DNA from: Ascidiella aspersa
Taxonomy: Eukaryota
Length of the DNA stretch: 64,000 nucleotides
Reading direction: 5' to 3'
Assembly: GCA_963924565.1 (NCBI GenBank)
Contig: OZ004607.1
Location: 27,714,001 to 27,778,000, forward strand
Of the stretch, positions 1 to 37,300 are shown piece by piece. The translations under genes were made by a program, and so were the position numbers. The stretch's first letter is position 1; each line of letters opens with the position of its first letter. Below the pieces are notes generated by a model that was not told the DNA's origin, searched no databases, and saw only the letters and a list, made by a program, of their open reading frames with translations.

Positions 1-398
1 ATAGTTGTAATGGATAGCGCGTATTTAAGTCTAAAATACTTGCGTTTATTCCTATTGGTACTCCAAATAACCTATTTTCCAAAATTACAAAAAGGATCGC
101 GGCACACTTAACAATCATTTTAGGCACACAGTTTGGAAATCACTGGTAGCGGCAATTTAAAATCATTAAGCCGTTTATAACATTTATACATAGGAAAGTT
201 GTAATTAGAAACACTCGGACCCCAATGGGTTAAAACATTCATGTAGTTACAAAATAAATGTCAGTTTAGTATTTCCCCAACAAAACGTTGTATCGATTCT
301 TGCCTTTATTCTTGTAAGCATGTAAACCTCGTCACTCGCGCGGTATTATCCGTATCAAACTTCAAAACTTTTTTGCAGCTTTGTCTGTTGTTATTTAG

Positions 399-3300
399 GT
401 GGCTCGTCGCTGAAAGAGAAGGAACTTTTGCGATCCCTCGAAATGCTGATCAGCAAACTGAACAGCGGGAAGGTAAACGGACGGCATGTACTTATTTACA
501 TCGTGGGTTATTCGGTGTTTGTGGCAAAAGTCATCTATACCTTTTGCTTTAATGACACATTTAATGGGATTTCCTTGAAATTTTGATTATTGGTTAATCA
601 TCTGCATTAAATATACGTCAATACTGTAAAACGTTCTAATCGTTACGACTTCTAAAATACACGTGATTTAACGGACAAATTAAATCTTTTGTTCTTTTTT
701 ATGCTGTTGAATATTAAATAAATAGGTATTAACCTTGGAACATCGTGTTTAGATCACGGTTTCCGACGAAGTAATTGAGGACGCCAAACGTAGATTGCAG
801 GGATTGGAAGGCAAGAGTTATGCAAGCGGAGCTGACGCGAATAAAAAGAAGGTTCGTGCACCATATGTCCAATTGGTAGTTTTTTCGCTCGCTAAACCTA
901 TAATGCAGTCCCTTTGTGAAAATTAAATTACTCTGTTTAATTGTACCAGAAATCAATTCCCTGTTGCTTCAGGTTTTGTATCAGATCGTTATAATAACTA
1001 TACCGCCAATGAAATTTTGATAGCTGCAAGGTCCAAACGACAAAATGTATCTTATAGTTGCTTTAAATAGACGGTTCTGTATGGCTGCTATTTTATTATA
1101 AGAAGTGACGAAGCAAATGTTCGGCAACGTTGGCAAGATTGCTAATTTAGAGTTTTTGCAACATTAAAACTTGGTTGATAAAAAAACTTCTATGACCGAC
1201 ACACAAAGGTAACATAAGGACAACGATATGCTTCCTGTGTGTGTCGGCTATAGTGCTTATGTCATGTTCAGTGCCGTAATGAAACTTTAATATTATTTTT
1301 ATTGCCACAAATTGAAAAAAAAACGACTTGTGGCCCGCTTTAGCAATATTTTCAGTTTTGGCGAACGATTCTTAAAGTTAAATGAGTTTTTGGTGTAAAG
1401 CACCTGAAAAATGCTACGCTGCCTCGCGTTCACATTCGCTGATATGTATTATATAACAAAAGCGCGTTCTTAGGACGGTTCGGCCATGGACGAGTGGAAG
1501 GCTCAGGGTCAGGAGGACCTGGTAAGGGCGCAGCAGAGCGACAAGATCGACCTCGACCGCGAGCTTTTGGCGGGAGAACGCGAGGCGATGAGTGGCCTGC
1601 TCATCTCCCATGACAACCAGCGGCAGAACGTCATCAAGGAGCTGAACGACAAGCTGGCCTTCCGCATGCAGGGAGACCTGTCCGACAAGGAGGTTAGGGG
1701 AGTGCACTAAAATCATGTTTATATTCGTTGAGTTGTCGAAACTCTATGTTTACCTAGCTGTCATGTGGTTCATGTGTTGCCACTTGTAAATTTGATCTTG
1801 GTGTGTCGTTTACTTTTTGTTTATACCCCAAGCAGAAAGGAGCTCTATCCAGTTTACTATAGTTTATTAGTAATTTATCTTAGTCGCTTACATGTATGTT
1901 TAATATTATATAAACTATTTATAACTTTGTTGTTTATGATTCATTCGAAAAACAGGTTGCATAAGTTACTGTGGTACAAGTTAACGTATTTAAACAGATA
2001 GGGACTTTTGTTTGTTTCTGATTACTGGATTAACAGTTATACATAAACTCATTTAACGAATTCTAAATATTTTTTGTGGGGATAAATATTTGTTTTGCTT
2101 TTCATTATATTATTAAGTTATGACCTAAAAGAATCGGGAATACCTGGTTTCCTATATTTAAGTTTTTACTATTCTTTGTTCCTCGGAAACCTGTCGCATA
2201 AAAGGCGGGAAAGTGTCAAGTTTGTAGTTTTCATGTTTGCTCAAACATAAGCAAAGTAAGAAAAAAGCTTGTGCTTTGTCTTCCCCATTGGCAAAATTTG
2301 TCAGTTCACCGATATAGCATACTCAAAAAAAGGGCAAAGTTTTAAAATATCGCCATAACCAAACGCGCTTCGCCCAGATGAACGCGCTCCTGGCCGAACA
2401 CGAGAAAGAGTTGGACAACGCGCTTGGGGCGTTCGGCCGCGAGCGACAGCGACAGATGAACGAGCTCAAGGAACAACTGGCCGCCAAGAGGCGCGAGAGA
2501 GCCGAGCAACTGAAACGCGAACACGGGAAACAGAGCAAGGACGCCGGTTTGCCTGGTGAGCGTCAAGCATACCCTTATTTTCCGCATTAGGTCTTGGGGT
2601 TAAGGGCATTTGCTATCGACGAGTTTCACCGAGTTTTCACTAAGCACAAACAGTTTTCTAACGTGTTCTTAGTGCCCAAAGATAAAAAAAAATGCGGAGT
2701 TGTCATTTATTTATTGTTTTCGTTGTACTCTGGCATTAATTTATTGTTTTCGTTGTATCTCAACGCGACAAGCTCTGTTTCGACTTGTTCGAATGGTTTA
2801 ATTAATTATCCATCGGTGTATTTGGTCTGCCTTAAACATAATCTGTATACTATATTTGTTTACAAATAAATAATCAACACCTATTCCGCAATAAGACATG
2901 TACACATTTAAGATACCTTTACCTTTCTAAGGGTTTTGAAAATCAATGATTTGTGTGGAAATGACAAAGTTAATGTGGAAAAAGAGAATAAATCTCCTCA
3001 CCTTTCCAGCTAAAAACGAAAATAAGTGCAATTTAAAGTATAACTTTTATAATTTTCTGTTTTAACCAAATTCAGTAATTTCTACATTCTCAAGAGAAAC
3101 ATATTTCGCCATAAAATAAGGCATCATCACTATCTAGAAATGAACAAAACAATGCCAACACCTAAACTGGTCGACAGCATTAAAAGCAAAAGGGAATGGT
3201 CGGAATTTTATAAACTAGACTTCTGTATAGCTTCCCGACATTACTGACCATTTTCGTTTCCAGTTGTCGACGAAGAGGATGATTCATCGTCCGATGAGAA

Positions 3301-6300
3301 CTTAGCAACGCTGGAGAAGCAACTGGAGGCGGCCATCTTGGAGGAGAGCGCTCTCGCATCCAAGGAGGAGTCGGATGCGCTGAGAGCAAACGATGAAGGA
3401 GTGAAACTCTCCAAGACCTTTGATGACGAATTGGTGGGGGGATTGAATATTTGTTTTATCTTGATTTCCACTGTTTTTGTCTCTTGTCTACTACGGGCGT
3501 TTTCAGTACAATTATGCAGTGCTGGGGTTCTGTGTCTTTACCACTTTGTATGAGAGGTTTGTTACAAATAAGTATTCTACGGTTGTATTATTATGTACAT
3601 TGTGTGCGTATTGCGATCTGACCTTCTAAAATCGAACTTGCCAACATTAACCTCACACGCCCAATTGATCACATTTCAATGAACATGTAAAATGCCTTTG
3701 CTTTGAAATCGAAGCGATCATGTTTTCCCAAAGTATCCAGTTTTGCTATTTGATTTAACAGTGGTCAGTTGGTCACCCCCTTACAACGAACAGTGTGTAC
3801 TACATGAGACCGATTTTACATCTTACATTGTTAAAAGCTTTCTCTGTTTGAAAAGAAAACGTTTTATTGACTCCTCAGAATATGGCCTGTACTATTGATT
3901 ATTCTAACAAACATTTGTTGTTTCAGAACGCGATGGTGACGAGCGGACTCATCACCGACGACGTCCGCGAGCAGATGAAGAAGCAGATCATGGAGCAAGA
4001 ACAAGCGCTCCAAGACAGGATGGAAAGGAGTAGGGAGATGCAGGTTAGGAAGAAAGCGTGTGATCAGCTACCTGATTTGTATATCTGATGTAATGTAATT
4101 CGAAAAGGCTTATGTCTGTATTATGGCGGATTTGGGCTGCAACGGTATTTTTAAACTAAAAAGCCATCTATCATAGTAATTGATTTAGATTCCTTCAAAT
4201 ATCTTAACCTGAGCAAAATGTCACCACCAAGCGCTTTTTTCGCAATGAAAAAGCGGTCAAATTGAAAGCGTTATAGTACGGATGTTGTAAAAGACGCGTT
4301 ACAAAGATATAACTTTTGTTCAGCTACCACCGACCGTGTTAAGAACTCGTTCATTTTTAAGTAAAATTACTTCGCTATTTCTCAGAATGCCTAATATTTG
4401 CGTTTAATACTGACCAATGACGTTTTGCGCGCAGATCAAGGCGCTTCGCGACCGAATGGCTGAACGCAAGAAGAAGAGAATGAAAAAGCTGGAGAAAAAG
4501 CACGATGAAGAAAGGGCGCAAGTTGTAAGTGGCACTAGGATAGCGTTCAGGAATCGCGAAATTATTGGTCGTGGTCGTCACACTATGTGGGCAAAAAATA
4601 TGGCACAAACTTTGTTGTCTTAAAGAGTGGAAAATTCTGTCGAACTGTTTTAGTTCTACAGAAAATATATTCACCTACATACACCAATTGGTATTCCTGG
4701 AAAGTGTATAAATTGAAATGTCACCACATAGGTTCTCTATAGTTAGTAGAAGTACTGGCCCAAAATATAATTCGGAATCTTACTGAGTATGTTATTCACA
4801 CCTTGGTCGTATTGACATACTCTGATTTCGGCCATTCCTCATTGATACTTCCAGCAACAACGTTACAGCAACATGCCGTTGTTAGTTTACCTTTGAAATA
4901 GATTAGTTTCGTATGGTACGCACTGACCCATACATCGCATTCTGCTGTTTTGTCCCTTTTTTTCTATTTTTATTTGTTTAATCCTTTATCTTCACTTGTT
5001 TTTTACACTGATGATGGCACGAGTTATTGCTGAAACGTCTGTAAACTGCGAAATGTCGATTTTATCGAATATAATGGCCTTAATATTTTTATTGAAATTA
5101 CTAAAAACCCGTGTATTGTGTTCCAAAGTTAGTTCGTATAGTTATTAAAAAAACAACGTAACATGCTTTCAACACTCATAAAACAACGTAATCATGCTTA
5201 CATCACTCAGCAAAACAACGTAAACATGCTTACATCACTCAGGACGAAGTAACGCCTGAAATGCAGCTGCGGCAATCGTCGGAGCGTGACGCGCTGTCGG
5301 CCGAGCTTGACGCCGAGGAGATGGCAATGGAGCGGAACGTGATCGAAGCCGTCCAATCAGAGCACGAGGAAGCGCTCAAGGAACTCCACCACGAGGTTAT
5401 CAACGAGGTGAGTGGATAGATGTTAGTTGGGTAAAGTCAATCTAATGGATTTAGGCTATTTCGATTTGATTATGTTATTTCATATTTGCAACTGGACAGC
5501 CGAAGATAATTAAGCGAGAATAACCTTTTTGTTGTTTACACCTGAAAAAACAGTGATGAGTAATGGACACAAAGTTGTTTTTTAACCTTTCGGACTTAGA
5601 ATATAAAAGTTAACAAGGTATGGCAACCTATTATCTTATTTTAGTTTGATGGCTTTTTCTTGAATTATTTTGTTTAATTTTTTATTGTTGCAAAACGACG
5701 CTTGTGCGGATGTCAAATTTGTGCCATACTTTTTGCCGGGTACTTCGACGGATAATAAAATATAGTGCCAACTTTTTTCTACCTGCAGATGGGCGAAAAG
5801 CACGGAGTTGATCCAGTGGCACAACAGGAGTTACTCGAACGCTACCGACGCGAAGCTGATAACTTCGACGAAGTGAACAGGCTCAGGAGGGACAAGCAAG
5901 CCCAGGACTTCAAGGTTTGACTTGCTAAATTACTAATAACCGATGTTAAATTCGTCACACGGGCATAATGAACTATTACTCCATGCACTAGGGTTGTTGA
6001 TTTCCCATTTTTGTATACCTTCTCACAATTCTGTGTGATCGTCATCTTGTTTTGATTTTGGCAACCGAAATTTGATTTGACTTTATTTATTTACAGCTTT
6101 AATATACATTATTTTAAACTGCCTTTAAAACATTTAGCTGTTGTTTATGGCAGCCTAGAAAACTTACTAAACATCCTAAAAACAAATTTTATTTAATAAA
6201 AAATCCAAGCCCTAAAAAATGACAAAGTATGACAAACACCTTTACATAGCCTAATTCGTGGTTAAAACGTTGGCAGTTTAATAAAACTTTGCCGAAAGAA

Positions 6301-9300
6301 CAATTGTCCAATTGATAGCTTAACTCGTTTAAATCCACCCCATGTTCCTGTTTTGTATTATGTTATTATGTGTAATACGCGAAAAAAAAGTACAAGCACA
6401 GCTTAAACGGCATCCTTCTCATTACTTTCTCTCCTCAGGCAAAACTTGCGGCCAAGCGAGCGAGGAGAGCCGCCGATGTGCAGAAGAGCAATGAAGATCG
6501 GATGAAGGGAGCTAAACGTGATGAGGAGCAAAAACGCCTGGAGGAGCTCGCCAAGCTTCAGGCGGAGGAGGAGGCCAAGAGGAAGCACGATGAGCAGTTC
6601 GGGGGACTTGACATCCCGGAAGTGCAAGTGGCCGATAACTTGGAAGTACAGGTGGGATTTTGTAAAGTTGAATTGGCGAATTCCTTTTTTTCGAGTGTTG
6701 TACATTTGCTACGCCTTCTGTATTTCCTAAGACCTAAGTCCTCAAACGATGTGCAAAATTACAACTATTTGTTCGAATTTATTCAGAAGCTATAACTGTA
6801 AACTGCAGTGAACTGTAGTTATTTGCGTGTAAATAAACCTATGGATGTGTCGCAGGAGTAATAAAGAAATGATCTTGTATTCAATTTAGACATTTTATAC
6901 TTTCTCGGTACACTAGAGTTATTGCGTCTCGCTGTTTATAAGTGATGCTGCATCATTATACTTCCTAAAAGTGATATTTTAATTAGACATTTACTGTTTT
7001 TTAAACTCCTCACGGCTTGTGCGTATTAGGCCAACCGACCAAGATACCCTTATTTACAGTATTATGAAATTCGTATGCGCTATCCGATATGTAGTATCAG
7101 TAATATAATACCCGTAACATAACATCCGTGATAATACATTCGCAATATGACATCCGTACATAACAATTCCATCTGTAATATAACAATTACATCTATAACT
7201 TGACATCCGTACAACTACCTTAGTGAAATGACATCAGTAATGTAACATCTCTAATACGACGTCCGTTATGCGGCTTACGTAATCTAATATCCAATTATAT
7301 CTATAAATAAATGACGTATTTCAACATTATATTACGTAAGTCATATTACGGAAATTTATTTACAATATAATATCTTTTACACCAGTTCTTCTTAACCTTT
7401 TTTCGCGGTGACCAAAATACTAATTGTTAGTATAATCACTAAACCATTGGCGACTCAACTTTTGTTCACGGAAGGTTCGTAAGCTAACATAACATAAACA
7501 CGACAAAAGTATAACTTAACAAGTTACAGTTTAATTGTTAAAGTCAAAATCTTTGCATTGGTTACGCAAAATTCTCAAGTTTGTGATAAATCTCACTAGC
7601 CCTGTGAAGTATAATGCTGTCGGCGGCCCACCTAAATCAAACGCCGACCCAATTTCTGGTCGCACCCATGTGTAGATAATCACTGTCTAACGCAACATAC
7701 ATAAACTGACACGTGTAATTTAACATCCATAACAGGCTCTTGTGCGCGAACAATCGCGGCTCCTGAACGAGACTGATCAGCAGCAGGCCTCCGAAGTCGA
7801 GAAGTTGGCCTCGGATCTCGAAAAGAAGGAAAAGGTTGAGGAAGAGGCGCTGGAGCGGAGGCTTGCAGAGGAGTCGGAGAAGGCGCTCCGAGAGACCAAG
7901 GCTAAGCAGGAGGCGGAGGCGAGAGCCAGGACCGACCTCTCGGACGAGCAAGTTCAGCAGGTGAGGAGCACAACTCGTCTTCCCTTCTTCCAGATAGTGA
8001 TAGACCTGGAACCTATGGATTTCAAACCTCCTCCGATACATCTAAAAGATAAAAATAGTATTTGTTTATTTTTAGGACCGGTGGATTTTGCCAACACGTT
8101 ATACAAGAACAACTTTAGTGAACTTAAACTACTAGTTGCACAGTTTAGAATTTCGCCAAAATTTAGTTTTGGATTGTATTCGACAATATTTAAACTGTAC
8201 TTCATCTTCTATAAGCAAAAAATGCTGCGGGCTAGATTAATTGACCCGGCAGTCCGTAGTTTGGTGACCCCTTACCTTGAGACGTACACATTTTTTGTAC
8301 TTTGTGCAAATTTGTTAACTGTTAACAGGTGATCTTAATTCGGGTTTTCAAACTTTAAGTTTGATTGTTATTTAAAAAAAAACACCAACACCAACAACCC
8401 CAACGTCGTATTTCGCAGCTTCTAGCCGCCCATCAGCAGGAACTTGACGAGATGGAGCTGGCGCTGGGCAAGCAACAAAACCGACAGCGAGCTGCTCTCC
8501 GCGAGAAACTGGCCGCTCGACGCACAAGAAAGACGGCCGCTCTCAGGAGCCGACAGGAGCTGGAGAAGGAACGGGAGCAGGTCGAGCAGCGGAAGGAGAT
8601 GGCGCAAGTGCAAGCCAAGACCGTGAGTGCTGATGGGTTTGCTTTCTTGCTGGAAGTTAAAGGGTTTGACGTAGTTTGGGTTTTTTTACCGCAGACGATT
8701 TGTTTTTCAAGTGTTTTGGGCAAAATGACTTGAACTTGACTTTGAGTTGATTTAAGTTATTTAAACCAATGACTTAGTTGATTTGACTTAAGTCTTTTGA
8801 ACAAAGACGTGGGTTAAAAACAAGTGTTTTCATTACGTATTTTTTTATGAAATTGGAATATTTATATTAAGTTTTCTACGTAAGACCCTTTGCTTGCTAC
8901 ATGTTGTGCTTTGTGCTATTTTTACTACAATTATTGCCTATAATCGGAAGAGTTCGACAGTTTATCGTTTAATCTCTTTGACAAAATCTTGACTTGGAAT
9001 TGACCTTCTCTAATTATGACTTGACTGGGACTTGACTTGCTATTCATTTAAAAAGACTTGACCTTGACTTTTTACACAAAACTTGACTAAGATCTAAGTC
9101 ATTTCAAAATGACTTGTTTACAACACTGCTACACATAAAATACCGTAAACTCTGTGAGACCGCATACCACGCAACTCCATGGCAAATTATATGGTAATAT
9201 ATGGTACCCGAGAGTGTCGAGCTAATGTTACGTCACAAAAAAAACAATTTTTTAATGTGTGTGGCAATTTAAAAAAAAGTTGTCGTCATTATACTGTTAT

Positions 9301-12300
9301 ATGGTAAATAAAAATGGCCAATATTGGCAGAGTCATATCAAGGCAATAAGCGTACATAAACATTCGGTAGAACAAGCGTGTGTGCTATGTTTTATAGTTG
9401 GACACAAAATTTTGATGCGCTTCACATTAAATTGTCGAGAGGTCACATTTGACAGTGATGTAAATGGCTGTTTTATGTCTGGCCAAAGCAAGTGCGATTT
9501 ATTTTACGAAAATTCCAGCACCGTGTTCTTAAATGATAGTAGGGTTAGTTATTTAAAAAAAACATATAAATGTATTTCGAAAACGGATTTGTCACAGATG
9601 AAAGAGGCGGAGCGGGATGCCATTTTGGAAGGCATCGAAAAGAACGGTTCGACTGCCAGCGAAAAAATCATTCAGAAGGTTTTGGAAAAACGTCAAGCAC
9701 AGGTGAATGACATTTACTTTGGAATATTAGAAACACACACTATACGCTTTGACAAGCAATACACGGCAATAGGCGTTATAAGTCACTATGGTTTACGTTG
9801 TTTTATTTTTTTACCAGGAATTGAAAGACCTGGAGAAGGAATTTGAACTGAAGAAACGTCTCCTTATCGAAGAAGCTCTGAAGGCGATTAAGGATCACTA
9901 CCAAGCCGAGCGCGACGCCATGGTACATACCAACAGATGTTATCCTTGTAAAGAATATTGAAACAACAAATCTAACTTTTTTTGCAATGATAATTTTTTG
10001 ATCGTATTCGCGATAAAGCAAGCAACATATTACAAATATCTTACAGTCATTTTGCATATAACGTTTGACATAGACCCTACTGTAAGTCTAAATTCTCTAA
10101 CTGTTGTTTTTTGTTGTTTAGCTTCAAAGACACGAGGCCGAGCTCCAGCGCTTGGAAGACGAGGGACTTTCCCCGGAGGAACTTGCCAAACGCAAAGCCG
10201 AACTCGCCGAACAACACAAGCGCCAACTTAGGTCGGTCCTTGTTTGGGCTTTCTTATATGAATATATAGGTGTTCAAAGCAAACACGCAATACACGATGT
10301 CTAAGGGTTCAGACCAGTGCTTCGCAATCTTTTGGCCTCGGCGAACCCTTTTTTGTCCCTTAAAGTGGCCACAAATTCCCAAAAAATTGGTATCTTAAAA
10401 TTTGGCTGATTATATGCCTTTCAACGGAACCTGATAAAACTTTCACGGACCCTCCTAAAGACGCATTGCGGACCCTAGGTTTGGAAACGCTGGTTTCGAC
10501 CTTGATCACCAACCTTTCATGAATGTTGCCCCACTTTCATGGGCTAACAGGGGATGTCCCTTGTGTCATAGTAAAAACAACAAGTTTGAGTCTAACTGGA
10601 TTATAGTTAAAATAATATATGCTTGTTGACCTAGCAACCACATTACTTTCTCCCTGGGGAGTGAGGGCCTCGGTAGAGCAACTGGTTTAGACCAATGTTC
10701 TTCAACCTTTTTCTGTTGTACATGTTTTCAACAATTTAGTAAAACAAAGTAGTAAAAAGATTGTTTCGCAGAAAGATATCATAAATAGTTGCTGGACACA
10801 TGATTAGATTAGTATTATACTGCAACAACAATAGAGTATGAAAAAGTACGAAAAAACGACAAAATTACGAAAAAACGTATTCACGCTGGCTTTTTAGTGG
10901 TTTCGTTTAACTATTCTAACATAATGCGGCATAAGGTTTTGCAATGGCCTTCCTTTCCACACCTTAAAGTAAACTTCAACCAATTAAAATCCTATGCCGA
11001 CAAGCAGTCCTATACGTAAGTTTGCCAGACAAAAAATGTCACGAAATTGGAAGAAGTTGAGTGTTTTGTTCAGTATAAAATACTCCTAATCGTTCGCTTT
11101 ATGTTAAAAAAGCTTTTCTACAGTGTTTTTTATCTGCAGTTCTCTGGACAAGAAACACAAGAAAGCGTGCAAGGAGATCGAGCTTGCAACCACCGCTGAG
11201 TGGAAGCTGGAATTCTCGCAAGCGAAACTCGGTCTTAAGGAGAAGCACTACCAAGTGAGACTCCGTAACTAAAGTTTACCAATGCCCTAATAAAAAAATA
11301 TTCTGTTCAAAAAAGTAACTAAATGTTTACGCGAATGTACCGCCTCGACCTTGCAGGATAATGATGACAAGGCTTCAAATAAAAAAATATATTTCTTGTT
11401 TAAATCTTATAAAATGACTGGCTTTGGTGTCATGCCAGATCTTTCTGAAGAACTTTTTGCTGTTTTATAATACAGTTGATATTTTATGTTACAAAAATTT
11501 ACCTGCTAACCACTTTCAACCTATTCTTTCTTCTCAGGAATTCGCCGAAGCCTTGCGAGAGCTTGCACCTAGCGCCACCCAGCAGAAATCTGCTGCCGAG
11601 GCCGACAAGTCAGTTAAACGACTCGAGGCGGTCAAAGAGCAACTGGAACAGGTGAAGCAAAAAATACGCTCAATTTTTACACATTCGTAATTTCATGAGC
11701 GCTTTGTTTCTTAGGCAAGGTTTTCATGTAGAGTTACTAAGCATCTCACAGTTCAAAGGGCTACGAAAAATAAGGTTGAGGTTAGACATGTAAATGTAGC
11801 GATTCAGTAAAGTAAAATTAGGCAGTTTCTTTTGGACGCTGCACAGTGTGAAACATGTCAAATGTAAAATAAACCTGGATACAGGATAGAAAATAAAAGC
11901 ATTTAGAAACTTACTTTTCCTAGAAATGTTTGCGCATCACATGAGTTGTTTTTCTTTTTTTATCGTTGTCGGTAATTATATTTCGATTGGTTGTTGTTTT
12001 AATATTTAGAATTCGTTCGGAACGCGTGACCACGGATGGTTTGGTTTTATCAGTGTCCTAATATTTTCACGAGTTATATGAAATCCACAAATACTACCCA
12101 GATATTTAATTGACAAGCACTAAAACGATATTTTTAATATGGAATTGACAAGTAATGACGTTTTCGCTGTGTGTTGTTCGAAATCAAAATTAAGTTAACT
12201 GTTAAATCAAAGAACGATTGACGTTAACCTTTTGTTTCTATGTTGATCTATTTTTAATCAAATATGAAATGGTACTGCATTTTTTATATTTTTTAATTTT

Positions 12301-15300
12301 TTATATATTTAAACAAGTGTTGAAACTGGGAAAATACTCTTTTACCATGTAACACCCCGCTATAATCGAAACAAGAGCCAGCAATCAATTTCCAATTAAA
12401 AACAAATTATCCTGAAATCGCAACTTCGCTACAAAGCTGGTTTTGCTTAAAGTACTCGAAAGCTGGTTTTGCTTAAAGTACTTGCATATGCGTTTCTTGT
12501 TTGTGACATCGATTAATCAATTTCTTCCTCCAGGAACGGGATGCCACCGAAAAGAAGTTCGCCCAGGAGCGGCTTGATCTCGAGGAGGAGGAGAGACGTA
12601 GGATCGCGGAGGCGCTGGGAGAGTTCGAGAAGCAGCTGGAGGAAGAGACGGAGCTGGAGAAAATGAAGGGAGAGAAGACTCTCGCAACTCTGGCGAAGAG
12701 AAAGGGCAAACTGCTCAAGGTGGGTCAAAGAGGACATTTTTTTTTAATCTGACTTGAAAGCTACACTTGGATAAGTTTGCCAGTTGGTTAAGGGCAGTGG
12801 TTCCCAAACTTTTTGTTCTTGCGACCCCTTTTACGTTTTTAATAACTTGCGCGACTCCCCAATTATAGTGTATGATACACAACCCAAAATCAATAAAACC
12901 ACATTTTTAAATTGACAAAATGCAATTGGGAAAAAATCTACACGGATTGTATCAAATTTGGCTAAAATATACGCATTTAAGTAGCCTATGTACAACAAGC
13001 TAAAGTTACGGGTAACGCGTCGCTTCATTTTTATTAGACATTGTTTGACTGAAGCTACGCTTGATTCATTACTTAAAGTTGAATGGTGACGTCATAAACA
13101 CGACTGGTTCACCGCAGCAAACGCCACATAAACACAAATGTTAGACTGGCGGTTGCTTTCTCCTTCTATACTGCTAAACTTTTAGTTCATATTGCCCATT
13201 TCTTTTATCAAAATACTACACGGCGACCCACCAGACAACCCCTTGCGACCCCCTTGGAGGTCACGAGGCCCAGGTTTGTAACCACTGGTTTAGGAGTATA
13301 CTCTTTATATCAGGGGTTCTTAAACTAGGAGGTGGTGTAAGCGTTTCCAAGGGAGGCGCGAAAAACTCTCCGATATCATTTATATAATATTAAGGTTTGC
13401 TAAAACGAATATTACCTTCTATTTCTTTTTAACTAATTTTTGGTTGTAACTAACATACGTTATTATATTCCAAGGACCAGAATACTTGCTATACACTGTA
13501 GTGTACAGTGTTGTACGGAAAAATTATACTAGTTCATTCCTCAAACAAATTTTTGCCAATTTACAATGTACATAACCTAAAAGTTTTTAAAGTATTAAAA
13601 ACACTGCTTTACATTCTCTTTTGAATTTTAAAACTTTGAACCTCTGTGCTAAACAACAATTCAATATCATAGGAGAAACGGCAGAACATGAAAGAGGAAC
13701 TGGAACGCGCTGCAGCTGCCGGAGCAAGCGAAGAGGAACAGAAGAGAATCCTGGATCAGGTTCGTCCTCTCTTAAGTATCAAAATAGCAGGACGGTGTCA
13801 AAATTGTAGTTCTAAGTATAATAACAAAGCCAGAGAAACATTTATGATTGAGTTTCGGCCACGTTGCCATTGTTAAGAATAACTGTGAGATTGCAAAAGC
13901 GCATCTTGATGTAAGTGCTTTATGATCTATTAAATTGTGTAATCATTCTATTACTTTGGGTCAAACGGTCAAAGGTCACTGGACACATGGTGCTTTGACA
14001 TTGTAGTTGTCCCTACGGCAGTTGGTGTTACTACCTTGTCGCGGCAGGAGCTCATATTGTGAGTTACTTGTAAGTGTTTGGCGATGATGTTTAACTTACA
14101 CTGATGCTGTTTATTCACTTGTCTTTTACACTGATGATGGCATAAGTTATGGCGTAAACGTCTGTAAATTGCGAAATGTCGATTTTATTGAATATTGTGG
14201 CTTTGATATTTTTATTGAGATGCTGTTTATGTTTCAAAAACACTGTTTTATATTCATTCCAATTAAGATATGAATCCACTTGTGTAAGCTTTTGTGTTAT
14301 TAATAAATTCCTTTACACTGATAAAGACTTCAATATCGGATCGGATCCATTAGTTTTCAGCCATCGCTCTTTTTTCTCCAGCACGAGAAGGACGTCGAGA
14401 ACCTGACGAACAAGATGGACCAGGAGCGCATCCGGATGCAGAGCAAGCTCCAGGAGAGGATGAAGAAGATGCGCAAAGAAAAGATCGCGGTTGGTGTTAA
14501 TCAGAAAATGTCTGCAAACGTATAACTATGGACGAGGAAAGATTGTGTTTATGTCTTAGATATGCGACTATTTTTGGACCATCTATATTTTGGAAAATTT
14601 ATTCGAATTAAAAAACTGACGATGCCTATTTACAAGGCGAAATGTATATTTCTTATAGGAAAATATATATTTATTTTTTTTAGTTTGAAAAAATGATTTC
14701 ATGTTTTATATCTGTTTTTATAAACAGTCTTACGATCATCTAATACGAAAACAATCTTTTTTTTACATTTTTTTGTCTGCGGGAGATTCCTTACTTCCTA
14801 AAGTGTTTTAGCTAATATCTTGAAAAATTATGATATTCTAATAACACGTTTATGATTGGGGCATTTATTATTGCTATAGATTACGTATGTAAAAGTATGT
14901 CAATGATTTTAGGCGAAGAAGCAAGAATTAAAGGACGAAGGTGATGCCAACAAAAAGGATTTCGAAAATAAACAGAAATCCGAAATGCAAAAGGTTCAAG
15001 AAAAACAGGTGCGTTTTTTGCCGAAAAAATACCTGTCTTAGAATAAAACTAATGATATCTTTAGCTGCATACCATAAAATACAAAACAAACTCTTCATAA
15101 ATTTGTTACGGTATCAAAAAGCATTTTACTATGTTAACAAAACAGCCTTGTTTTCTGCTCAAGTGGAAGTGGATCTTATAGCTACCACTTTAGGTTAATA
15201 CTCTTTAGCGTAACGTATCTAATTGTCATCTTTATCGTAAGTGTTAAAAGTTAATCCTATTGTCAGATCCAAGAGATCCAGGAAGCAGCGGAGGTGATGG

Positions 15301-18300
15301 ACGGCGAGGCAAAAAGAGTGCAGGATCAGGCGATACCCCATCTTCCTCAGAAGCAACCGGAAGACTTGCTTCAACGCGGTAATGCTATGATACATGACAG
15401 CGACTAAAATTTACGGCCCCGAGTCTGTCAGTTGGTTAAAATACTTTGGCTATTAGACTATAAAATAAACTTTTAATGCACAACTAACTGTTAAGTAAAT
15501 GGCCAAACTAAATGGTAAAACGCTATATATATTCACACACAAATGCAAAAACGGTTTTTATTTTAATGGTGAAAATAACGGCCCAAATAGGCGTTAAAAG
15601 CGACATGCTTTATTTTCAAACGTTTCGGCAAATTCTCATGCCATCATCAGTGATGTTTGCCGAAAAGTTTGAATAAGAATTTGCCGAAACGTTTGAGAAT
15701 AAAGCATGTCGCTTTTAACGTCTATTTGGGCCGTTATTTTCACCATTAAACTTATGAACAGATCCGTATTAAGTGTTCCAAGGTTTTTATTTCATTACAT
15801 ATTTACGTTTAGTTTGTTAAGGTTTACTGCAGAAAAATTTTACTTTCCTTCCTCTTCACATAATAATTTGTTTGAATCAAAACGCTTTTTTTATTAGACC
15901 TAATATTTCTTTTCTAATTAACCTCCGTCTTTAGACGCACTTCAAGAAACTACTTATCCTGCTGTTACATTCGACCCCAACGTTCAGATGGTTCCATACG
16001 CCGGACCCACAGTTCCATCAATGAGGTAAGTGAGCTCAGTGGTCGTATACTTTTCGTTGCCGAGAATTAAAATAAAAAATGACAAATTTTATTTGCTTTA
16101 AGTAAATTTCAACAGTGTCTTTAGATCCTCCAAAAAATGCTACAGTAAAAATGCTTAGTTGTTAATAATAATTAATAATGAAGGTAACTAAAGATGATAC
16201 AAGTTCGCATCGAAACGTCTTAATTAAAATGATTTCGATTTGCTCAACCTTTTTGACTTTGCAATTCATTATCAAGCAATAATAAAGATGCATTCAGATA
16301 ATGTTAAGGATAGATGAAGATGCTGTTTTTATTTTTTTATTTACTACAACGTTTTATTTTTGACAACATCATGCCTATTTAATAGCTAGTGTGTCGGACG
16401 TAGGTTTTGAACTTGTTCACTAAATCTATTCCGAAATCATTAGGCTATTTATTGTTGTTTGGTTCAATTCAGCGAGGACGATGTCCACAAAATGCTCGTG
16501 TCCTCTCCTCTCTTCCATACACTCCAAGAGATCAGGGAGGTCCTCGTGGACGAGAAACAAGCCGGAGGAGGATCGACATCCGTCTTCACCGGTCCAGGTA
16601 AGTCGTGAACTTTTGGTGACGTTGCAAAGACGAAAAACTGTTCGTGATCCTAATAGTCGTGAACTTTAAGTGACGTTGCAAAGACGAAAAACTGTTCATG
16701 ATCCTAATATACGTTCAGTAGAAAAAGAGTGGCCCATATAAATGATAAAATATTTATTATTTTAATTGCATACGTTTCGGCAAGTGCTTATGCCATCTTC
16801 AGTTGCCGAAACGTATGCAAATAAAAGAATGAATCTTTTATGATTTATTTGGGCCACTCTTTTTCTACTGAAGATTATGAACAGATCCGTGTTTAGTGTT
16901 CCTAATATACGTCGCTAGGATTTTTGTAATACGCAAGGTTGTTGTTTACTTACTCAGATATTGATAATTGCTTGGTGGCCGGATCGCAAAAACAACAAAA
17001 GACAAACAAAATGCATGAATGTATGATGTACACCTGAAAACAACAACAAAATTTGATTGCCGATTAAATCAAATAAAACCAATTAAATGTTTAGTACCAT
17101 AAAATGTACTTTGGCTGTACAGTAGATAATAAGTATATGCATCAAACAAGTATATGTGTAAATTGTTTAAAGAAAAAAACGTTTTGTCATCCAATAGCCT
17201 CGTTTAAGTTTTTCTGGTCGATGCGCGACACTTGTAATAAAGTTTTTTTAAAGCAACCAGTGGTTTTCAAATATAATCTTTTATCGAATGAATCAAGCTT
17301 GTAATTATGTGTTTTTGTAAAAACCAGTGGTTTCCAAGCCTTACCTTTCTTATAATTAGTTTTTATTATGGAAACCAGTTTCTTCCAAGTCTTACCTTAA
17401 TTCGAATGAAACAAACTTGGAATTAAGTTTAATATATAGAAACCCGTGGCTTCCCACTCTTACTTTAATTCGAATGAATCAAACTTATAATTAAGTTTTA
17501 TTTATAGTAACCATTGGTTTCCAAGTCTTACATTAATTCGAATGAACCAAGCTTGTAATTAAGTTTACGCGCCCTTTGCCTTGCAGACGTGAACAGCACT
17601 GACGGCGACCTGATTCCGACTCCTTTGGCCGAGCTGAGCGTACGAGAGCTGGTCGCCTACAAGTTCGGCACCTTCATCTTGACCCTGCTGCGCAGCAGGC
17701 GACCCTCACACCCCCCTGTCAGTCTCCTGGTGGCCGAGCGGGTGCCCGGGCGTCCCGACCTCAAAACCAACGCGTTCAGGGGCTCATTCTGGTACGCGGC
17801 CTTATTGTTTTTACGATGCATGTAATGATATCCTTTACCATAACTGAGTTGCAAAACTTTGTTTCACATTACGTCCACATTAATGTTTACTTCGTGAGTA
17901 TAAATCGGCTTTAAGCAACAAGATTGAAGCTTTAAACTCGTAACATGTCTTGAGAAACTTAAAAAAAAACTGTATGGGAACCCTATAGTTCAGTTACTCT
18001 CGACTTAGAACGAGCCGTTATAAGTATTAGGCCCTGTGGGCTCTTTTTATCAAATTACAGGAGTTGTAATTGTTTAAAAACAAGCAGTTTCCATAAGTTA
18101 TAGCAAGTACTTGTTAGTAGTAATTAGCATTAAAAGTTTGTCGCTATTATAGCCCAGTATAACCATGTGCGAACGCTGGTAAATGTTGCTTTCATTCATT
18201 AGTTTTTTTTACAAAAATGGCATCAGTTCGGTAAAAAGTAATGTTTTATCAAAATAACCAGTGCTTTTGTCTAAATCAACGTTTATATTCTTTGTGCAGT

Positions 18301-34356: not shown

Positions 34357-37300
34357 CTATGAAGGCGCCGACACTTGAGTCCTCGATATCGCCAGTGTCC
34401 GGCGGTAAGCTGGCGACGGGAGCGACAAAGTTGAGGTACGCAGGAGAAGAAGCGAGTGGAGGTTGGCCAGCGCGAGGCCCAACACTACGCACAGCGCCAA
34501 CAGGGGTCCAGTCGGTCCCGACAGGCGGGCCGCCGCCGCCCCAGACGGCCCCGGATTAGAGGCGATCGGGTTACGACCACATCCCGACGCCGCGTCGGGT
34601 TCCACCGGTTCCCAGAGCTTGACGACCTCGAGTGAAACCCCGGGTGCGTCGCCGCGCAGAGCGTGCATACGCCGCACGTCTTCTAGAGCGGCGCGCGCCG
34701 CCAGTGTGAAGTTCACGTCGCCCGTCGTCACCAGGTCAAAGACGCACGAGTCAAAGTAGAAGTTGAACGAACCGGGCGCCGCGGCCGCATCGCTCTGCGC
34801 GTTTTTGGCGCACGGCTTATCACTTACAGCTCGCCTTGAGCGCGTACGTCGCTTTCTCTTGCGCCGCTTACCGCCGCCACCGCGCCTCGTTCTCCGTGAA
34901 AGTGTTGGTTGCGAGGCGGTGCGCGTCTTCCTCTGGTTGCTGGATGAAGGTACGAGGGAGGAGAAGGCCAGCGACGAGGAAGCCTGGATCTTGTTGGCGT
35001 CGTCGCCGAACGAGCTGGCGTGCGATGAGGAACCTGAGACGCGCTCGGGTGGAAGTTGGACCCCAGTTACTGCCAGTATGATCTCCTTGCACTTGCCCCT
35101 TGCCTCGACCTCGGTGAACTTGCGAATCCCGGGCGGCGAGTTCTTTCTGAGCGGATTGTCAGGTTTCAAGGCGGGGCTTCCATCGACGCTCTTGTTGATG
35201 TTTTTAAGGAGGGTGGACGGCGACATGGCCTGGGCGTCGGGACAGCCCTGGTCGCAGAGCTGGTGCTGGGACTCGACCCCGGCCACGAACTCGCGCGGCG
35301 TGCGGATGGCGAAGGTGAGGGAGGTGTCCACGCGCCGGATGACCACCGTGGTGCCGATGAAGCCCGCGCTGATCTCGACGCGGTTGCGGGCGTGAGACTC
35401 CTCTAATATAGAGACGCTGCCCGTCTTCGTCGACCCGTCGGTGAAGGCCTTGGGCAGGTTTTTGCTCGAGGCCGAGTACAACTTGCGCCCGGCGCACATT
35501 CCCGCCTCCTTGAAAAGGACCGTGATCTGCGGGGGAGAGAAAATGTCGTGAATATGACGAAAAACGTTATTAAAGCTAAAAGCGTAACTATATCGAAGCG
35601 CGTACATTGGTGAGGATATTTTAACGTTTGAAATCATTGTTTAAAATGCATAAAAAATACACAAATTGTACTTGCTGTTTGCCCTTCAACACAGTCCAGT
35701 TCAAAATTGTCCATTGAAATATATAGGAGTGTTAAATTATAGATAAGTCCAACGTTAGAATTTACTTAAGACATCACAATCGCAAGCAACTGTGTTGTAA
35801 TGACTAAAGTCATTGACTCGAGTGCACTGAATTTTGTTTTCAAATGACTTGACTGCGACTTAAGTCATTTCGAAATGACTTGTTTACAACACTGGCAAGC
35901 AAGTCAAAAACAAACCGGGTTAAGGAATTTCCGAATAGTAAATATAAAAAATAGGGCCTAATCAGAGTGCGACAAAGGCCAAAATTAAATGCGCCAAAAA
36001 AAACGCGCAATCAGACGCGGAAATCCTAATCCAATCGGTCGGGATCGCGCGGGCGCTGGTGCTCGGCAAATCAAACTCACTTCACGCTCGGAAGGGTGAG
36101 AAAATGCGACGCGAAAACACACAAGCGAGCCGGGTGCGAACCAACGGTGGCCTTTGTCAGAGGGCCGGAATCGTGTCGAGGGCCCTTTGCTGCGCTCGAG
36201 TGCAATGCTTTGGGCGGACAGGCGGCGAAAACAACGCGGCTGGGGAACTGTCAGGAGCGCAGTCGACAGCGGCTTTGTTTTTGTTTCGCGGGGCGCGATG
36301 ATTAATGGCGTGCGGCATCACGGTTTACTTGCACGACCGCCATAAGATAACTGTATATTTCGTCAAAAGGAAGTCACACCTTGGCTGTTCGGCCGGCACC
36401 TGGTTGAAAAAACTCACAGGAAATCGATTTCAGATCGTTTCACTCATAGCGGGAAATTTAAGCGAATTGGCGTATTTAACAAATGAGAGGAGGTTTGCTA
36501 TCAACGGTCGTTGATCCTTTTTGCTTGGTTAAGCGTATACGCCACCGCTTCCGTCTGCCACAACAGCTGCCCACATGATTCCAAAAATGGGCAATGAGTT
36601 TTTTTCAGCGCGAATGCCTTGGATTCGCGACTTGTCTAATAACACGCCCCATCCCTTGTCACCCAGGAGTAGCCTCTGCAGTTTAGAGAAGGCGAGCTTG
36701 TTGATTTGCTCGGCTGCGGTCTCTGGCCTAATGTTGTTGGGCCGACAACGTTCATCTGGTTTAAATCAACGCTCTAAAAGGACGCGGAAACCGGTCGGTG
36801 CGAATCCGGCAAAGACGCCATTCAGCGTTAGCCGGGCATCCAGCCGATTTAACAAGCAGGCCCAGCATGCCACTGTGTGTATGTGTTGTGTATGTGAGCG
36901 TCGCTAGCGCGGGTGAGTGTGTTGTTGTGGAGGCATTTTTGGAAATATACGCCGATGAAAGCTGTTTAAGTATGGTACACGACAAAAGCGAGCGAAATTG
37001 CGAGGCGATGAAGAGTTAATGCGGGAGCGCCTCACGGCAGACCTTTTTAGCGGAAATCGCCGCGACCGGGAGTCTTGGTCGATCGCCAAAGTCGGTTACT
37101 TATTATCATGCGCGACTTTTACGACGCGCTTGACATTGTTCCAGTCGCGCGGCACATCACGACCTTGCCGCCTGGCGCTGCCCGCATACGAGCGAGCGTG
37201 TTTTCATAGAAGACGGGAGGGAATTTTTCCCGAGTTCCGGCGCGTCTGTCGAGCGGTTTAGTTTAACTTTGCAGCCGCGGTAAAGGCAAAACACCAGGAC

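What the first reader, a model, noticed from the sequence alone, without database searches (positions are those of the whole stretch)
4918..16912. Four hammerhead-bearing Penelope-like mini-insertions within 12 kb, with stem I sequence differing between copies
Seen: four insertions (~5000, ~14130, ~15640, ~16790) share CTGA(T/A)GA-TGGCA-N8-TGC(C/T)-GAAA-CG-T(C/T/A), degenerate in copy 2. Three end in a common tail ..ccgt(g/a)t....gtgttcc. The sequence after the cleavage site differs by copy (tgtaaa, tgaaaa, tgcaa) and the 5' strand changes to match where retained (tttaca, tca, gca plus one extra base). No RT or GIY-YIG ORF is present in the window. Inference: several subfamilies of a probably unannotated non-autonomous PLE or retrozyme-like system mobilised in trans. 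This is my best candidate for an undescribed system here.
Basis: partly seen in the sequence, partly recalled or inferred. Interest (0 to 1): 0.8.

Follow-up and report, generated by a model that had tools for sequence, protein, structure and literature searches.

The report
Truncated Penelope-like retrotransposon ends with hammerheads
The four hammerhead-bearing mini-insertions are real, but they are ordinary broken-off ends of Penelope-like retrotransposons whose complete, enzyme-coding copies sit elsewhere in the same animal genome, a kind of element described since 2014.

Summary
Four minimal type-I hammerhead motifs lie at 5008, 14131, 15650(-) and 16802(-), against 0 expected by chance. 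The same motif occurs 1,124 times in the 308-Mb genome, against 0 for the control.

Each insertion has a 10-12-nt target-site duplication. Copies 3 and 4 are inverted dimers. A fifth, decayed fragment lies at 16185-16289.

These are Penelope-like element (PLE) ends, but not an undescribed non-autonomous system.
- Complete elements exist in this genome: an 848-aa ORF with RT and C-terminal GIY-YIG, flanked by hammerheads 2,773 bp apart.
- Families A (copies 1 and 2) and D (copy 4) are found joined to PLE ORF remnants.
- The "common tail" is the start of the PLE ORF: an ATG 9-13 nt after the cleavage site, then about 25 codons.
- It ends where PLE reverse transcription is known to begin.

All of the anatomy matches published PLE biology (PMC4209133, PMC8557442, PMC11167929). 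This covers 5' truncation, the inverted 5' arm, a ~30-nt tail at one end only, the extra base after A9, the palindromic ACGU and stem covariation.

Family B (copy 3; 404 copies) remains open as a possible short non-autonomous derivative. Other first-reader notes of this scan flag the same families elsewhere in this genome.

The parts
4903..4914 (.). Left target-site duplication of copy 1 (ttagtttcgtat). Its partner is at 5129-5139.
   Evidence: Read directly. One base is missing in the right copy.
4915..5128 (+). Copy 1, family A: a simple 5'-truncated PLE end. It consists of the 3'UTR (4915-5001), stem I 5' strand (5002-5007), hammerhead (5008-5039, cut after C5039), stem I 3' strand (5040-5045), ATG at 5053, about 25 codons of ORF start, and a tail ending gtgttcc(aaag).
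   Evidence: About 40 genomic loci match it from its first to its last base. In 7 loci the PLE ORF ends about 5 nt before the point where copy 1 begins.
5008..5039 (+). Hammerhead of copy 1: intact core, in the sense orientation of the host intron.
14115..14220 (+). Copy 2, family A: 106 bp. It starts 16 nt before the hammerhead and ends at the tail-less site (..ttattgag). The core is dead (G12 to U, and stem II 3' strand changed). The target-site duplication tgctgtttat lies at 14105-14114 and 14221-14230.
15564..15781 (.). Copy 3, family B: an inverted dimer inserted as one unit. The left arm on the minus strand (to about 15654) has the whole hammerhead at 15619-15650 but no tail. The centre carries a short duplication. 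The right arm on the plus strand (from about 15673) starts in loop II and has the full tail. The target-site duplication ggtttttattt lies at 15553-15563 and 15782-15792.
   Evidence: (more than 30 loci match it end to end), and 60 (hairpin of -124.5 kcal/mol, z -19.7).
16185..16289 (+). Fifth PLE fragment, family E (stem II GAUAC/GUAUC type). The CUGA of the core is deleted and stem II is mutated. The ATG is 9 nt after the former cut site.
   Evidence: It matches L041, where this hammerhead type follows a PLE ORF.
16715..16902 (.). Copy 4, family D: an inverted dimer. The left arm on the minus strand (16715-16802) holds the hammerhead at 16771-16802, has no stem I 5' strand of its own and no tail. 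The right arm on the plus strand (16803-16902) has the full tail. The target-site duplication (cc)taatatacgt lies at 16703-16714 and 16901-16912.

Best explanation
The insertions are dead-on-arrival terminal fragments of canonical endonuclease-bearing Penelope-like retrotransposons (PLEs). At least four families are represented. All lie in introns of a plus-strand coiled-coil gene of an animal.

**Shown here**
- The hammerhead sits in the pseudo-LTR, 4-13 nt upstream of the ORF's ATG in six of the seven lineages read (46 nt in the seventh).
- The element's genomic 3' end lies about 75 nt inside the ORF.
- Two alternative 3' ends lie about 30 nt apart; the stretch between them is the 'tail'.
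- Most copies are extremely 5'-truncated.
- About half carry an inverted second arm at the 5' side.
- The tail is never present on both arms.

**Taken from published biochemistry (PMC11167929)**
- The PLE enzyme starts reverse transcription at two internal sites in the start of its ORF.
- It nicks and extends both DNA strands.
- This explains the two ends and the inverted dimers.

**Inferred, not shown**
- The hammerheads, which can form helix III only as dimers (palindromic ACGU), trim multimeric PLE transcripts.
- In copies 3 and 4 the ribozyme would be locked in a long hairpin and idle.
- Copy 1 has an intact core in the sense strand of the host intron, but as a lone minimal motif it should cleave poorly.
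For: **Full-length partners**
- L033 has an 848-aa open frame with hammerheads 2,773 bp apart on both sides.
- RVT_1 scores 38 bits. GIY-YIG scores 25.1 bits against a cut-off of 22.6.
- The nearest Atlas clusters carry HTH_animal + RVT_1 + DUF8422 + GIY-YIG.
- 77 RT matches fall into several lineages.

**Links to the window's families**
- Family A tails follow the ORF C-terminus in L044, L045, L048, L060, L061, L064 and L067.
- A family D tail at C4:20600258 is downstream of RT remnants, and another at C8:17195104 is inverted upstream of RT remnants.
- Family B tails run on into PKYIGNH codons at 6 loci.

**The tail is the ORF start**
- The N-terminal peptides are conserved across families and are in frame with the ORF in L033.

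**Insertion anatomy**
- All four window copies have target-site duplications.
- The tail is on one end only: 9 sense, 8 inverted, 10 none, 0 both.
- An inverted arm is present in at least 14 of 27 unbiased copies.
- DNA depth rises from 88 at the ORF 5' end to 3,187 at the 3'UTR, then to 57,000-114,000 at hammerhead plus tail.

**Hammerhead structure**
- 79% of cells are paired, against 43% or less when the partners are slid.
- Pair 10-47 reads AU 30, GC 9, UA 8.

**Literature match**: PMC4209133, PMC8557442, PMC11167929.
Against: - No RT or endonuclease is in the window itself.
- No intact family A or family B ORF was seen. The A-linked ORFs carry stops.
- Family B copies are uniformly short in the unbiased sample: 0 of 6 reach more than 23 nt upstream.
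- Three of three inspected B copies lose homology to each other about 21 nt before the hammerhead. This looks like a defined 5' end rather than random truncation.
- RNA reads showed no ORF coverage and no ends at the cleavage site, so neither activity nor ribozyme cleavage is shown.
- The Rfam hammerhead models do not score these motifs.
Confidence: 0.85

Rival explanations
1. The copies belong to non-autonomous, pLTR-only PLE derivatives (mini-PLEs, dispersed relatives of animal retrozymes or of Schistosoma Sm-alpha-type elements). They have a defined 5' end and are copied in trans by a PLE enzyme that recognises the shared tail.
For: **Family B only**
- There are 404 copies, of which 218 carry the same 15-nt leader.
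- The three inspected copies lose homology to each other about 21 nt upstream of the hammerhead.
- None of 6 unbiased copies extends further.
- None of about 100 listed B positions lies next to a listed RT match.
- One same-strand pair lies 128 nt apart at C4:5245250/5245378.
- One locus has the ORF start cut to 16 codons, then a stop, then the leader and hammerhead.

**Other points**
- The family B tail resembles the C/D tail.
- The idea is published for vertebrates (bioRxiv 10.64898/2026.07.22.740005).
Against: - Families A, C, D and E are found joined to PLE ORFs.
- The 5' ends of A and C copies are scattered.
- B-type tails continue into ORF codons at 6 loci.
- Head-to-head B pairs have gaps of 44 to 156 nt between their leaders, so some B arms reach beyond the leader.
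- No tandem arrays are in the window.
- No small RNA or circular RNA evidence was found.
Confidence: 0.13
2. The hairpin copies 3 and 4 are host small-RNA genes (miRNA or siRNA precursors) rather than mere transposon debris.
For: - Copy 3 folds into a near-perfect hairpin of more than 85 bp: -124.5 kcal/mol, z -19.7.
- There are weak Rfam similarities to mir-722 (37.8 bits) and mir-9436 (37.4 bits).
Against: - Those scores are less than half of the gathering cut-offs (81 and 80 bits).
- The similarity is to the GAAACGUUU arms, that is, to the hammerhead itself.
- Dozens of equivalent hairpins are scattered in the genome with target-site duplications.
- No RNA evidence was found.
Confidence: 0.02

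Closest known systems
Minimal hammerheads of metazoan Penelope-like elements (Cervera and de la Pena 2014, PMC4209133)
   Same: - The core is CUGANGA...GAAA.
- There is an extra base between A9 and 10.1.
- The 10.1-11.1 pair is G-C.
- Positions 15.1-16.1 read the palindrome ACGU, so helix III forms only in a dimer.
- Each genome holds many consensus families full of compensatory changes.
- Single motifs come from truncated PLEs, and pairs lie on opposite strands 100-700 bp apart.
- A U3-A8 core variant is also present here, in lineage 2.
   Different: - These are species-specific families.
- The cleavage-site base is C, U or A according to family.
- The initiator ATG lies 4-13 nt after the cut site in six of seven lineages.
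Canonical EN+ PLE insertion architecture (Craig et al. 2021, PMC8557442; Frangieh et al. 2024, PMC11167929)
   Same: - A single ORF with RT and C-terminal GIY-YIG.
- Pseudo-LTRs arising from partial tandems.
- Heavy 5' truncation.
- An inverted 5'-truncated copy at the 5' end.
- A 30-40-bp tail at one end only.
- A 3' end that lies inside the start of the ORF.
   Different: - In the anole element the ORF starts at stem II, 26 nt before the cut site. Here it starts after the cut site.
- The clade assignment (Penelope/Poseidon, Neptune or Nematis) was not tested.
Metazoan non-LTR retrozymes (Cervera and de la Pena 2020, PMC7229834; Li, Clavereau and Pollet 2026, bioRxiv 10.64898/2026.07.22.740005)
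   Same: - Short, hammerhead-bearing, non-coding repeats.
- They co-exist with PLEs and are thought to derive from pLTRs.
   Different: - Retrozymes are tandem repeats of 170-400 nt with canonical type-I hammerheads, and they give abundant circular RNAs.
- The window copies are single or inverted, carry minimal hammerheads, lie in introns, and gave no RNA signal.

Membership tests
Penelope-like elements (EN+) | [quoted passage not shown] | tested here: met
   This is met in genomic partners, not in the window. L033 has an 848-aa ORF with RVT_1 at 38 bits and GIY-YIG at 25.1 bits against a cut-off of 22.6. L032 shows the same. The window has none.
Penelope-like elements (EN+) | Pseudo-LTRs arising from partial tandem copies, with the hammerhead inside them | tested here: met
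   In L033 and L037 hammerheads flank the ORF, 2,773 and 2,633 bp apart. L034 is a tandem array of period 2,671 bp.
Penelope-like elements (EN+) | Heavy 5' truncation, with a frequent inverted 5'-truncated copy at the 5' end | tested here: met
   DNA depth rises from 88 to 3,187 to about 10^5. Upstream extents are scattered. An inverted arm is present in at least 14 of 27 copies and in window copies 3 and 4.
Penelope-like elements (EN+) | [quoted passage not shown] | tested here: met
   The tail is 29-33 nt long. Of 27 copies, 9 have it on the sense arm, 8 on the inverted arm, 10 have none and 0 have both. Window copies 3 and 4 have it on the right arm only, and copy 2 has none.
Penelope-like elements (EN+) | Target-site duplications of about 10-15 bp | tested here: met
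   Duplications of 10-12 nt flank all four window copies (read).
PLE-type minimal hammerhead | Conserved core, an extra base after A9, a G10.1-C11.1 pair and a palindromic 15.2-16.2 | tested here: met
   In the alignment of 53 distinct copies the core columns are invariant: C3 U4 G5 A6, G8 A9, the U after A9, and GAAA followed by CGU. Copies 1, 3 and 4 are intact. Copy 2 and the fragment at 16185 are not.
PLE-type minimal hammerhead | Compensatory changes in helices I and II | tested here: met
   In one search, 35 cells changed on both sides against 10.6 in shuffles, and the covariation score is 0.228 against 0.09 or less when slid. Further families in the loci have ACC/GGU, AUC/GAU, CC/GG and AACC/GGUU stems. 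The changes are few events shared by related copies.
PLE-type minimal hammerhead | Self-cleavage | tested here: inconclusive
   RNA run X5 gave only 74 reads, none beginning or ending at the cut site. Only about 6% of the run was read. The literature reports low activity in vitro.
Rfam hammerhead families | A match to a curated covariance model | tested here: not met
   There was no hammerhead hit at gathering score or at E up to 10. This is expected, because helix III is absent in the monomer.
Metazoan non-LTR retrozymes | Head-to-tail tandem repeats of 170-400 nt, each with a canonical type-I hammerhead | tested here: not met
   The window copies are single or inverted. Only one same-strand pair (128 nt apart) was seen among the listed genomic places. 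The hammerheads are minimal, not canonical.
Metazoan non-LTR retrozymes | [quoted passage not shown] | tested here: inconclusive
   No such reads appeared in the one RNA run laid. Short RNAs are easily lost in such libraries.

The most novel reading that the evidence does not exclude
Family B (window copy 3; at least 404 copies) is not random truncation debris. It is a discrete element of about 145 nt: a 21-nt leader, the hammerhead, and the first roughly 25 codons with the tail.

Two origins are possible:
- It is a pLTR-only non-autonomous PLE derivative, a dispersed invertebrate counterpart of retrozymes.
- It is the product of reverse transcription starting at the 5'-proximal initiation site of a PLE mRNA. 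In that case the 5' ends of the mini-copies would map the pLTR promoter's start site.

A side reading: the cut site lies 4-13 nt before the ATG in six lineages. This hints that the ribozyme sets the 5' end of the translated RNA, as HDV-like ribozymes do in some LINEs.
Probability: 0.3. Interest if true: 0.45.

Novelty: new member of a known kind. Interest (0 to 1): 0.22.

Why it matters
- It shows that the hammerhead motifs scattered through this animal's introns are the normal by-product of Penelope-like element activity, not a new mobile system.
- It provides a clean natural set of at least 10 co-varying minimal hammerhead families, including the U3-A8 core variant, in one genome.
- It provides genomic support, from a second and distant host, for the two-site internal initiation and two-strand priming model. 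That model was derived in vitro from one lizard element.
- For annotation, these families should be masked as PLE ends. Otherwise the hairpins risk being called miRNA precursors.

Tried and rejected
- **Rfam.** Scans at gathering score and at E up to 10 gave no hammerhead family, only weak miRNA look-alikes on the hairpins.
- **RNA evidence.** One RNA run (X5) was laid on a full-length element. It gave 74 reads, almost all from pLTR pieces embedded in other transcripts, with no ORF coverage and no ends at the cut site. It therefore says nothing for or against expression or cleavage.
- **Partner of family B.**
  - No listed RT match lies near a listed B copy.
  - B tails do continue into ORF codons at 6 loci.
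  - Only one locus has the exact ORF-start-to-leader junction.
  - The question stays unresolved.
- **Fetching limit.** I did not try to read flanks by other means.
- **Thermodynamic signal.** The copy 1 hammerhead folds no better than shuffles (z -0.1), as expected for a minimal motif.
- **Rejected readings.** A chance motif is ruled out: 0 of 100 shuffles matched and there were 0 control matches. A tandem retrozyme array is ruled out for the window.
- **Not attempted.** The organism was not identified. An RGM homologue in the window shows only that it is an animal. Dfam and Repbase comparison is not available here. No consensus of any coding part was built.
Full report
**1.

No shuffle of the window gave any match.

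In the window's own assembly (308.6 Mb, 75 contigs; window = C1:27,714,001-27,778,000) the motif occurs 1,124 times. The reversed control pattern occurs 0 times.

Rfam does not recognise the motif at gathering score or at E up to 10. The only weak hits are miRNA models on the hairpin copies.

The window comes from an animal, since it also holds an RGM homologue. The insertions lie in AT-rich introns of a plus-strand gene with GC-rich coiled-coil exons.

**2. Anatomy of the copies**

All have target-site duplications, read directly.
- **Copy 1 (4915-5128, +).** A 3'UTR, hammerhead and tail, flanked by ttagtt(t)cgtat.
- **Copy 2 (14115-14220, +).** It starts 16 nt before the hammerhead, ends about 30 nt short of the others (no tail), has G12 changed to U, and is flanked by tgctgtttat.
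- **Copies 3 (15564-15781) and 4 (16715-16902).** Both are inverted dimers. The left arm on the minus strand holds the complete hammerhead but no tail. The right arm on the plus strand begins inside the hammerhead and carries the full tail. The whole unit is flanked by ggtttttattt or (cc)taatatacgt.
- **Copy 3 as RNA.** It would form a hairpin of -124.5 kcal/mol (z -19.7), which buries the ribozyme.
- **A fifth fragment (16185-16289, +).** It belongs to another family and has lost CUGA.

**3. Full-length partners exist**

The first 30 genomic hits fall into families. One search shows that family C copies share up to 945 nt upstream of the hammerhead.

That upstream sequence encodes a reverse transcriptase and a GIY-YIG endonuclease.
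- In L033 an 848-aa open frame is flanked by identical hammerheads 2,773 bp apart.
- RVT_1 scores 38 bits and GIY-YIG 25.1 bits, above its cut-off.
- The nearest clusters of a protein atlas have the PLE architecture HTH_animal + RVT_1 + DUF8422 + GIY-YIG.
- A search with the RT finds 77 matches in several lineages, at about 97%, 75-93%, 44-56% and 32-34% identity. One of them is a tandem array.

The window's families link to ORFs as follows.
- **Family A (copies 1 and 2).** It follows the ORF C-terminus in at least seven loci.
- **Family D (copy 4).** It lies beside RT remnants at C4:20.60 Mb and C8:17.19 Mb.
- **Family E (the fifth fragment).** It follows an ORF in L041.

**4. What the 'common tail' is**

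- In six of the seven lineages read, an ATG lies 4-13 nt after the cleavage site. In the seventh, lineage 3, it lies 46 nt after.
- That ATG opens a conserved N-terminal peptide, M-(S/N)-L-L-S-x-I-W-A-x-(I/L)-F-L-L-K.
- In families A to D the peptide goes on to end in (S/P)-V-(Y/F)-(S/C)-V-P, and in L033 it runs in frame into the RT ORF.
- The tail is therefore the first ~25 codons of the PLE protein.
- The genomic 3' end of the element (gtgttcc, often followed by aaag) lies inside the ORF.
- A second, tail-less 3' end lies 29-33 nt upstream; copy 2 and many other loci use it.

**5. This is textbook PLE behaviour**

- Craig et al. (PMC8557442) describe heavy 5' truncation, an inverted 5'-truncated copy at the 5' end, and a 30-40-bp tail at one end only.
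- Frangieh et al. (PMC11167929) show in vitro that a PLE enzyme starts reverse transcription at two adjacent internal sites in the start of the ORF. The tail is the stretch between them. The enzyme also cleaves and extends both DNA strands.

My counts from an unbiased sample of 27 copies agree.
- The tail is on the sense arm in 9, on the inverted arm in 8, on neither in 10, and on both in 0.
- An inverted arm is present in at least 14.
- DNA word depth over a full element rises from 88 at the ORF start to 3,187 at the 3'UTR, then jumps to 57,000-114,000 over hammerhead plus tail.

The complete hairpin units of copies 3 and 4 match more than 30 other loci each, end to end, with variable centres. 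I read these as recurrent two-strand priming events, not as one amplified hairpin.

**6. The ribozyme**

- In 53 distinct copies the core is invariant, as are the U after A9 and the ACGU that can form helix III only between two molecules.
- With helices I and II as named, 79% of cells pair, against 43% or less when partners are slid. Thirty-five cells change on both sides, against 10.6 in shuffles.
- Other families met by chance in the loci have quite different but complementary stems. One lineage has the U3-A8 core variant.
- All of these traits are listed by Cervera and de la Pena for PLE hammerheads (PMC4209133). That paper also reports low activity in vitro and single motifs arising from truncated PLEs.
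- Cleavage in this animal is not shown. The one RNA run gave 74 reads and no ends at the cut site.

**7. What stays open: family B (copy 3)**

Points for a discrete short element:
- It has 404 copies, and 218 share the leader GTGGCCTTYATATCA.
- None of six unbiased copies extends more than 23 nt upstream.
- The three copies I could read lose homology to each other about 21 nt before the hammerhead.

Points against:
- B tails continue into ORF codons (PKYIGNH) at six loci.
- Head-to-head B pairs have 44-156 nt between their leaders.

B may be a short non-autonomous derivative, or it may be the product of initiation at the 5'-proximal site of a PLE mRNA.

**8. Verdict**

- The call 'Penelope-like, hammerhead-bearing, several subfamilies with co-varying stem I' is correct.
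- The call 'undescribed non-autonomous or retrozyme-like system' is not supported for families A and D (copies 1, 2 and 4). It remains open for family B (copy 3).
- The kind has been known since 2014, and the derivation of retrozymes from pLTRs is already proposed.
- Several other first-reader notes of this scan flag the same families in other windows of this genome.
- These are new members of a known kind, of low to moderate interest.

Noticed in passing
window 15595-15714: The Rfam models mir-722 and mir-9436 give their best sub-threshold matches (37-38 bits; cut-offs 80-81) on the arms of hairpin copy 3. The matched region is the GAAACGUUU of the hammerhead and its complement. Those miRNA families may themselves derive from PLE inverted repeats.
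   Followed up: no
window 16601-16712: A roughly 56-bp stretch that begins at the 5' splice site of the preceding exon is duplicated in tandem. It lies immediately before the target-site duplication of copy 4.
   Followed up: no
L034 (C9:23484500-23494499), L035, L036: A second PLE lineage (816-843-aa ORFs without stops, tandem period 2,671 bp) carries a hammerhead with the U3-A8 core covariant (UUGAAAA...GAAAC) instead of C3-G8. Its ATG is 4 nt after the cut site.
   Followed up: partly
G000 C1:37575519-37726131: Family B copies recur on the same strand about every 20 kb, eight times. This suggests a segmentally duplicated array that carried one insertion along.
   Followed up: no
G000 C4:5245238-5245412: Two family B hammerheads with leaders lie on the same strand 128 nt apart. 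This is the only retrozyme-like head-to-tail pair seen in the listed places.
   Followed up: no
window 34357-35637 and 44014-44715 (-): Exons of a repulsive guidance molecule (RGM) homologue: RGM_C E 2.7e-43, RGM_N E 2.8e-07. This shows that the genome is an animal's.
   Followed up: partly
G000 C2:326654-1031205: Eight identical family A hammerheads, all on the minus strand, lie within the first megabase of contig 2. This may be a subterminal cluster.
   Followed up: no
L008:1966-2025, L015:818-877, L039:4382-4441: Three further minimal hammerhead families turned up by chance in fetched flanks. Their cores are 36 nt long, their stem I pairs are ACC/GGU, AUC/GAU and CC/GG, and their stem II sequences are unrelated.
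   Followed up: partly
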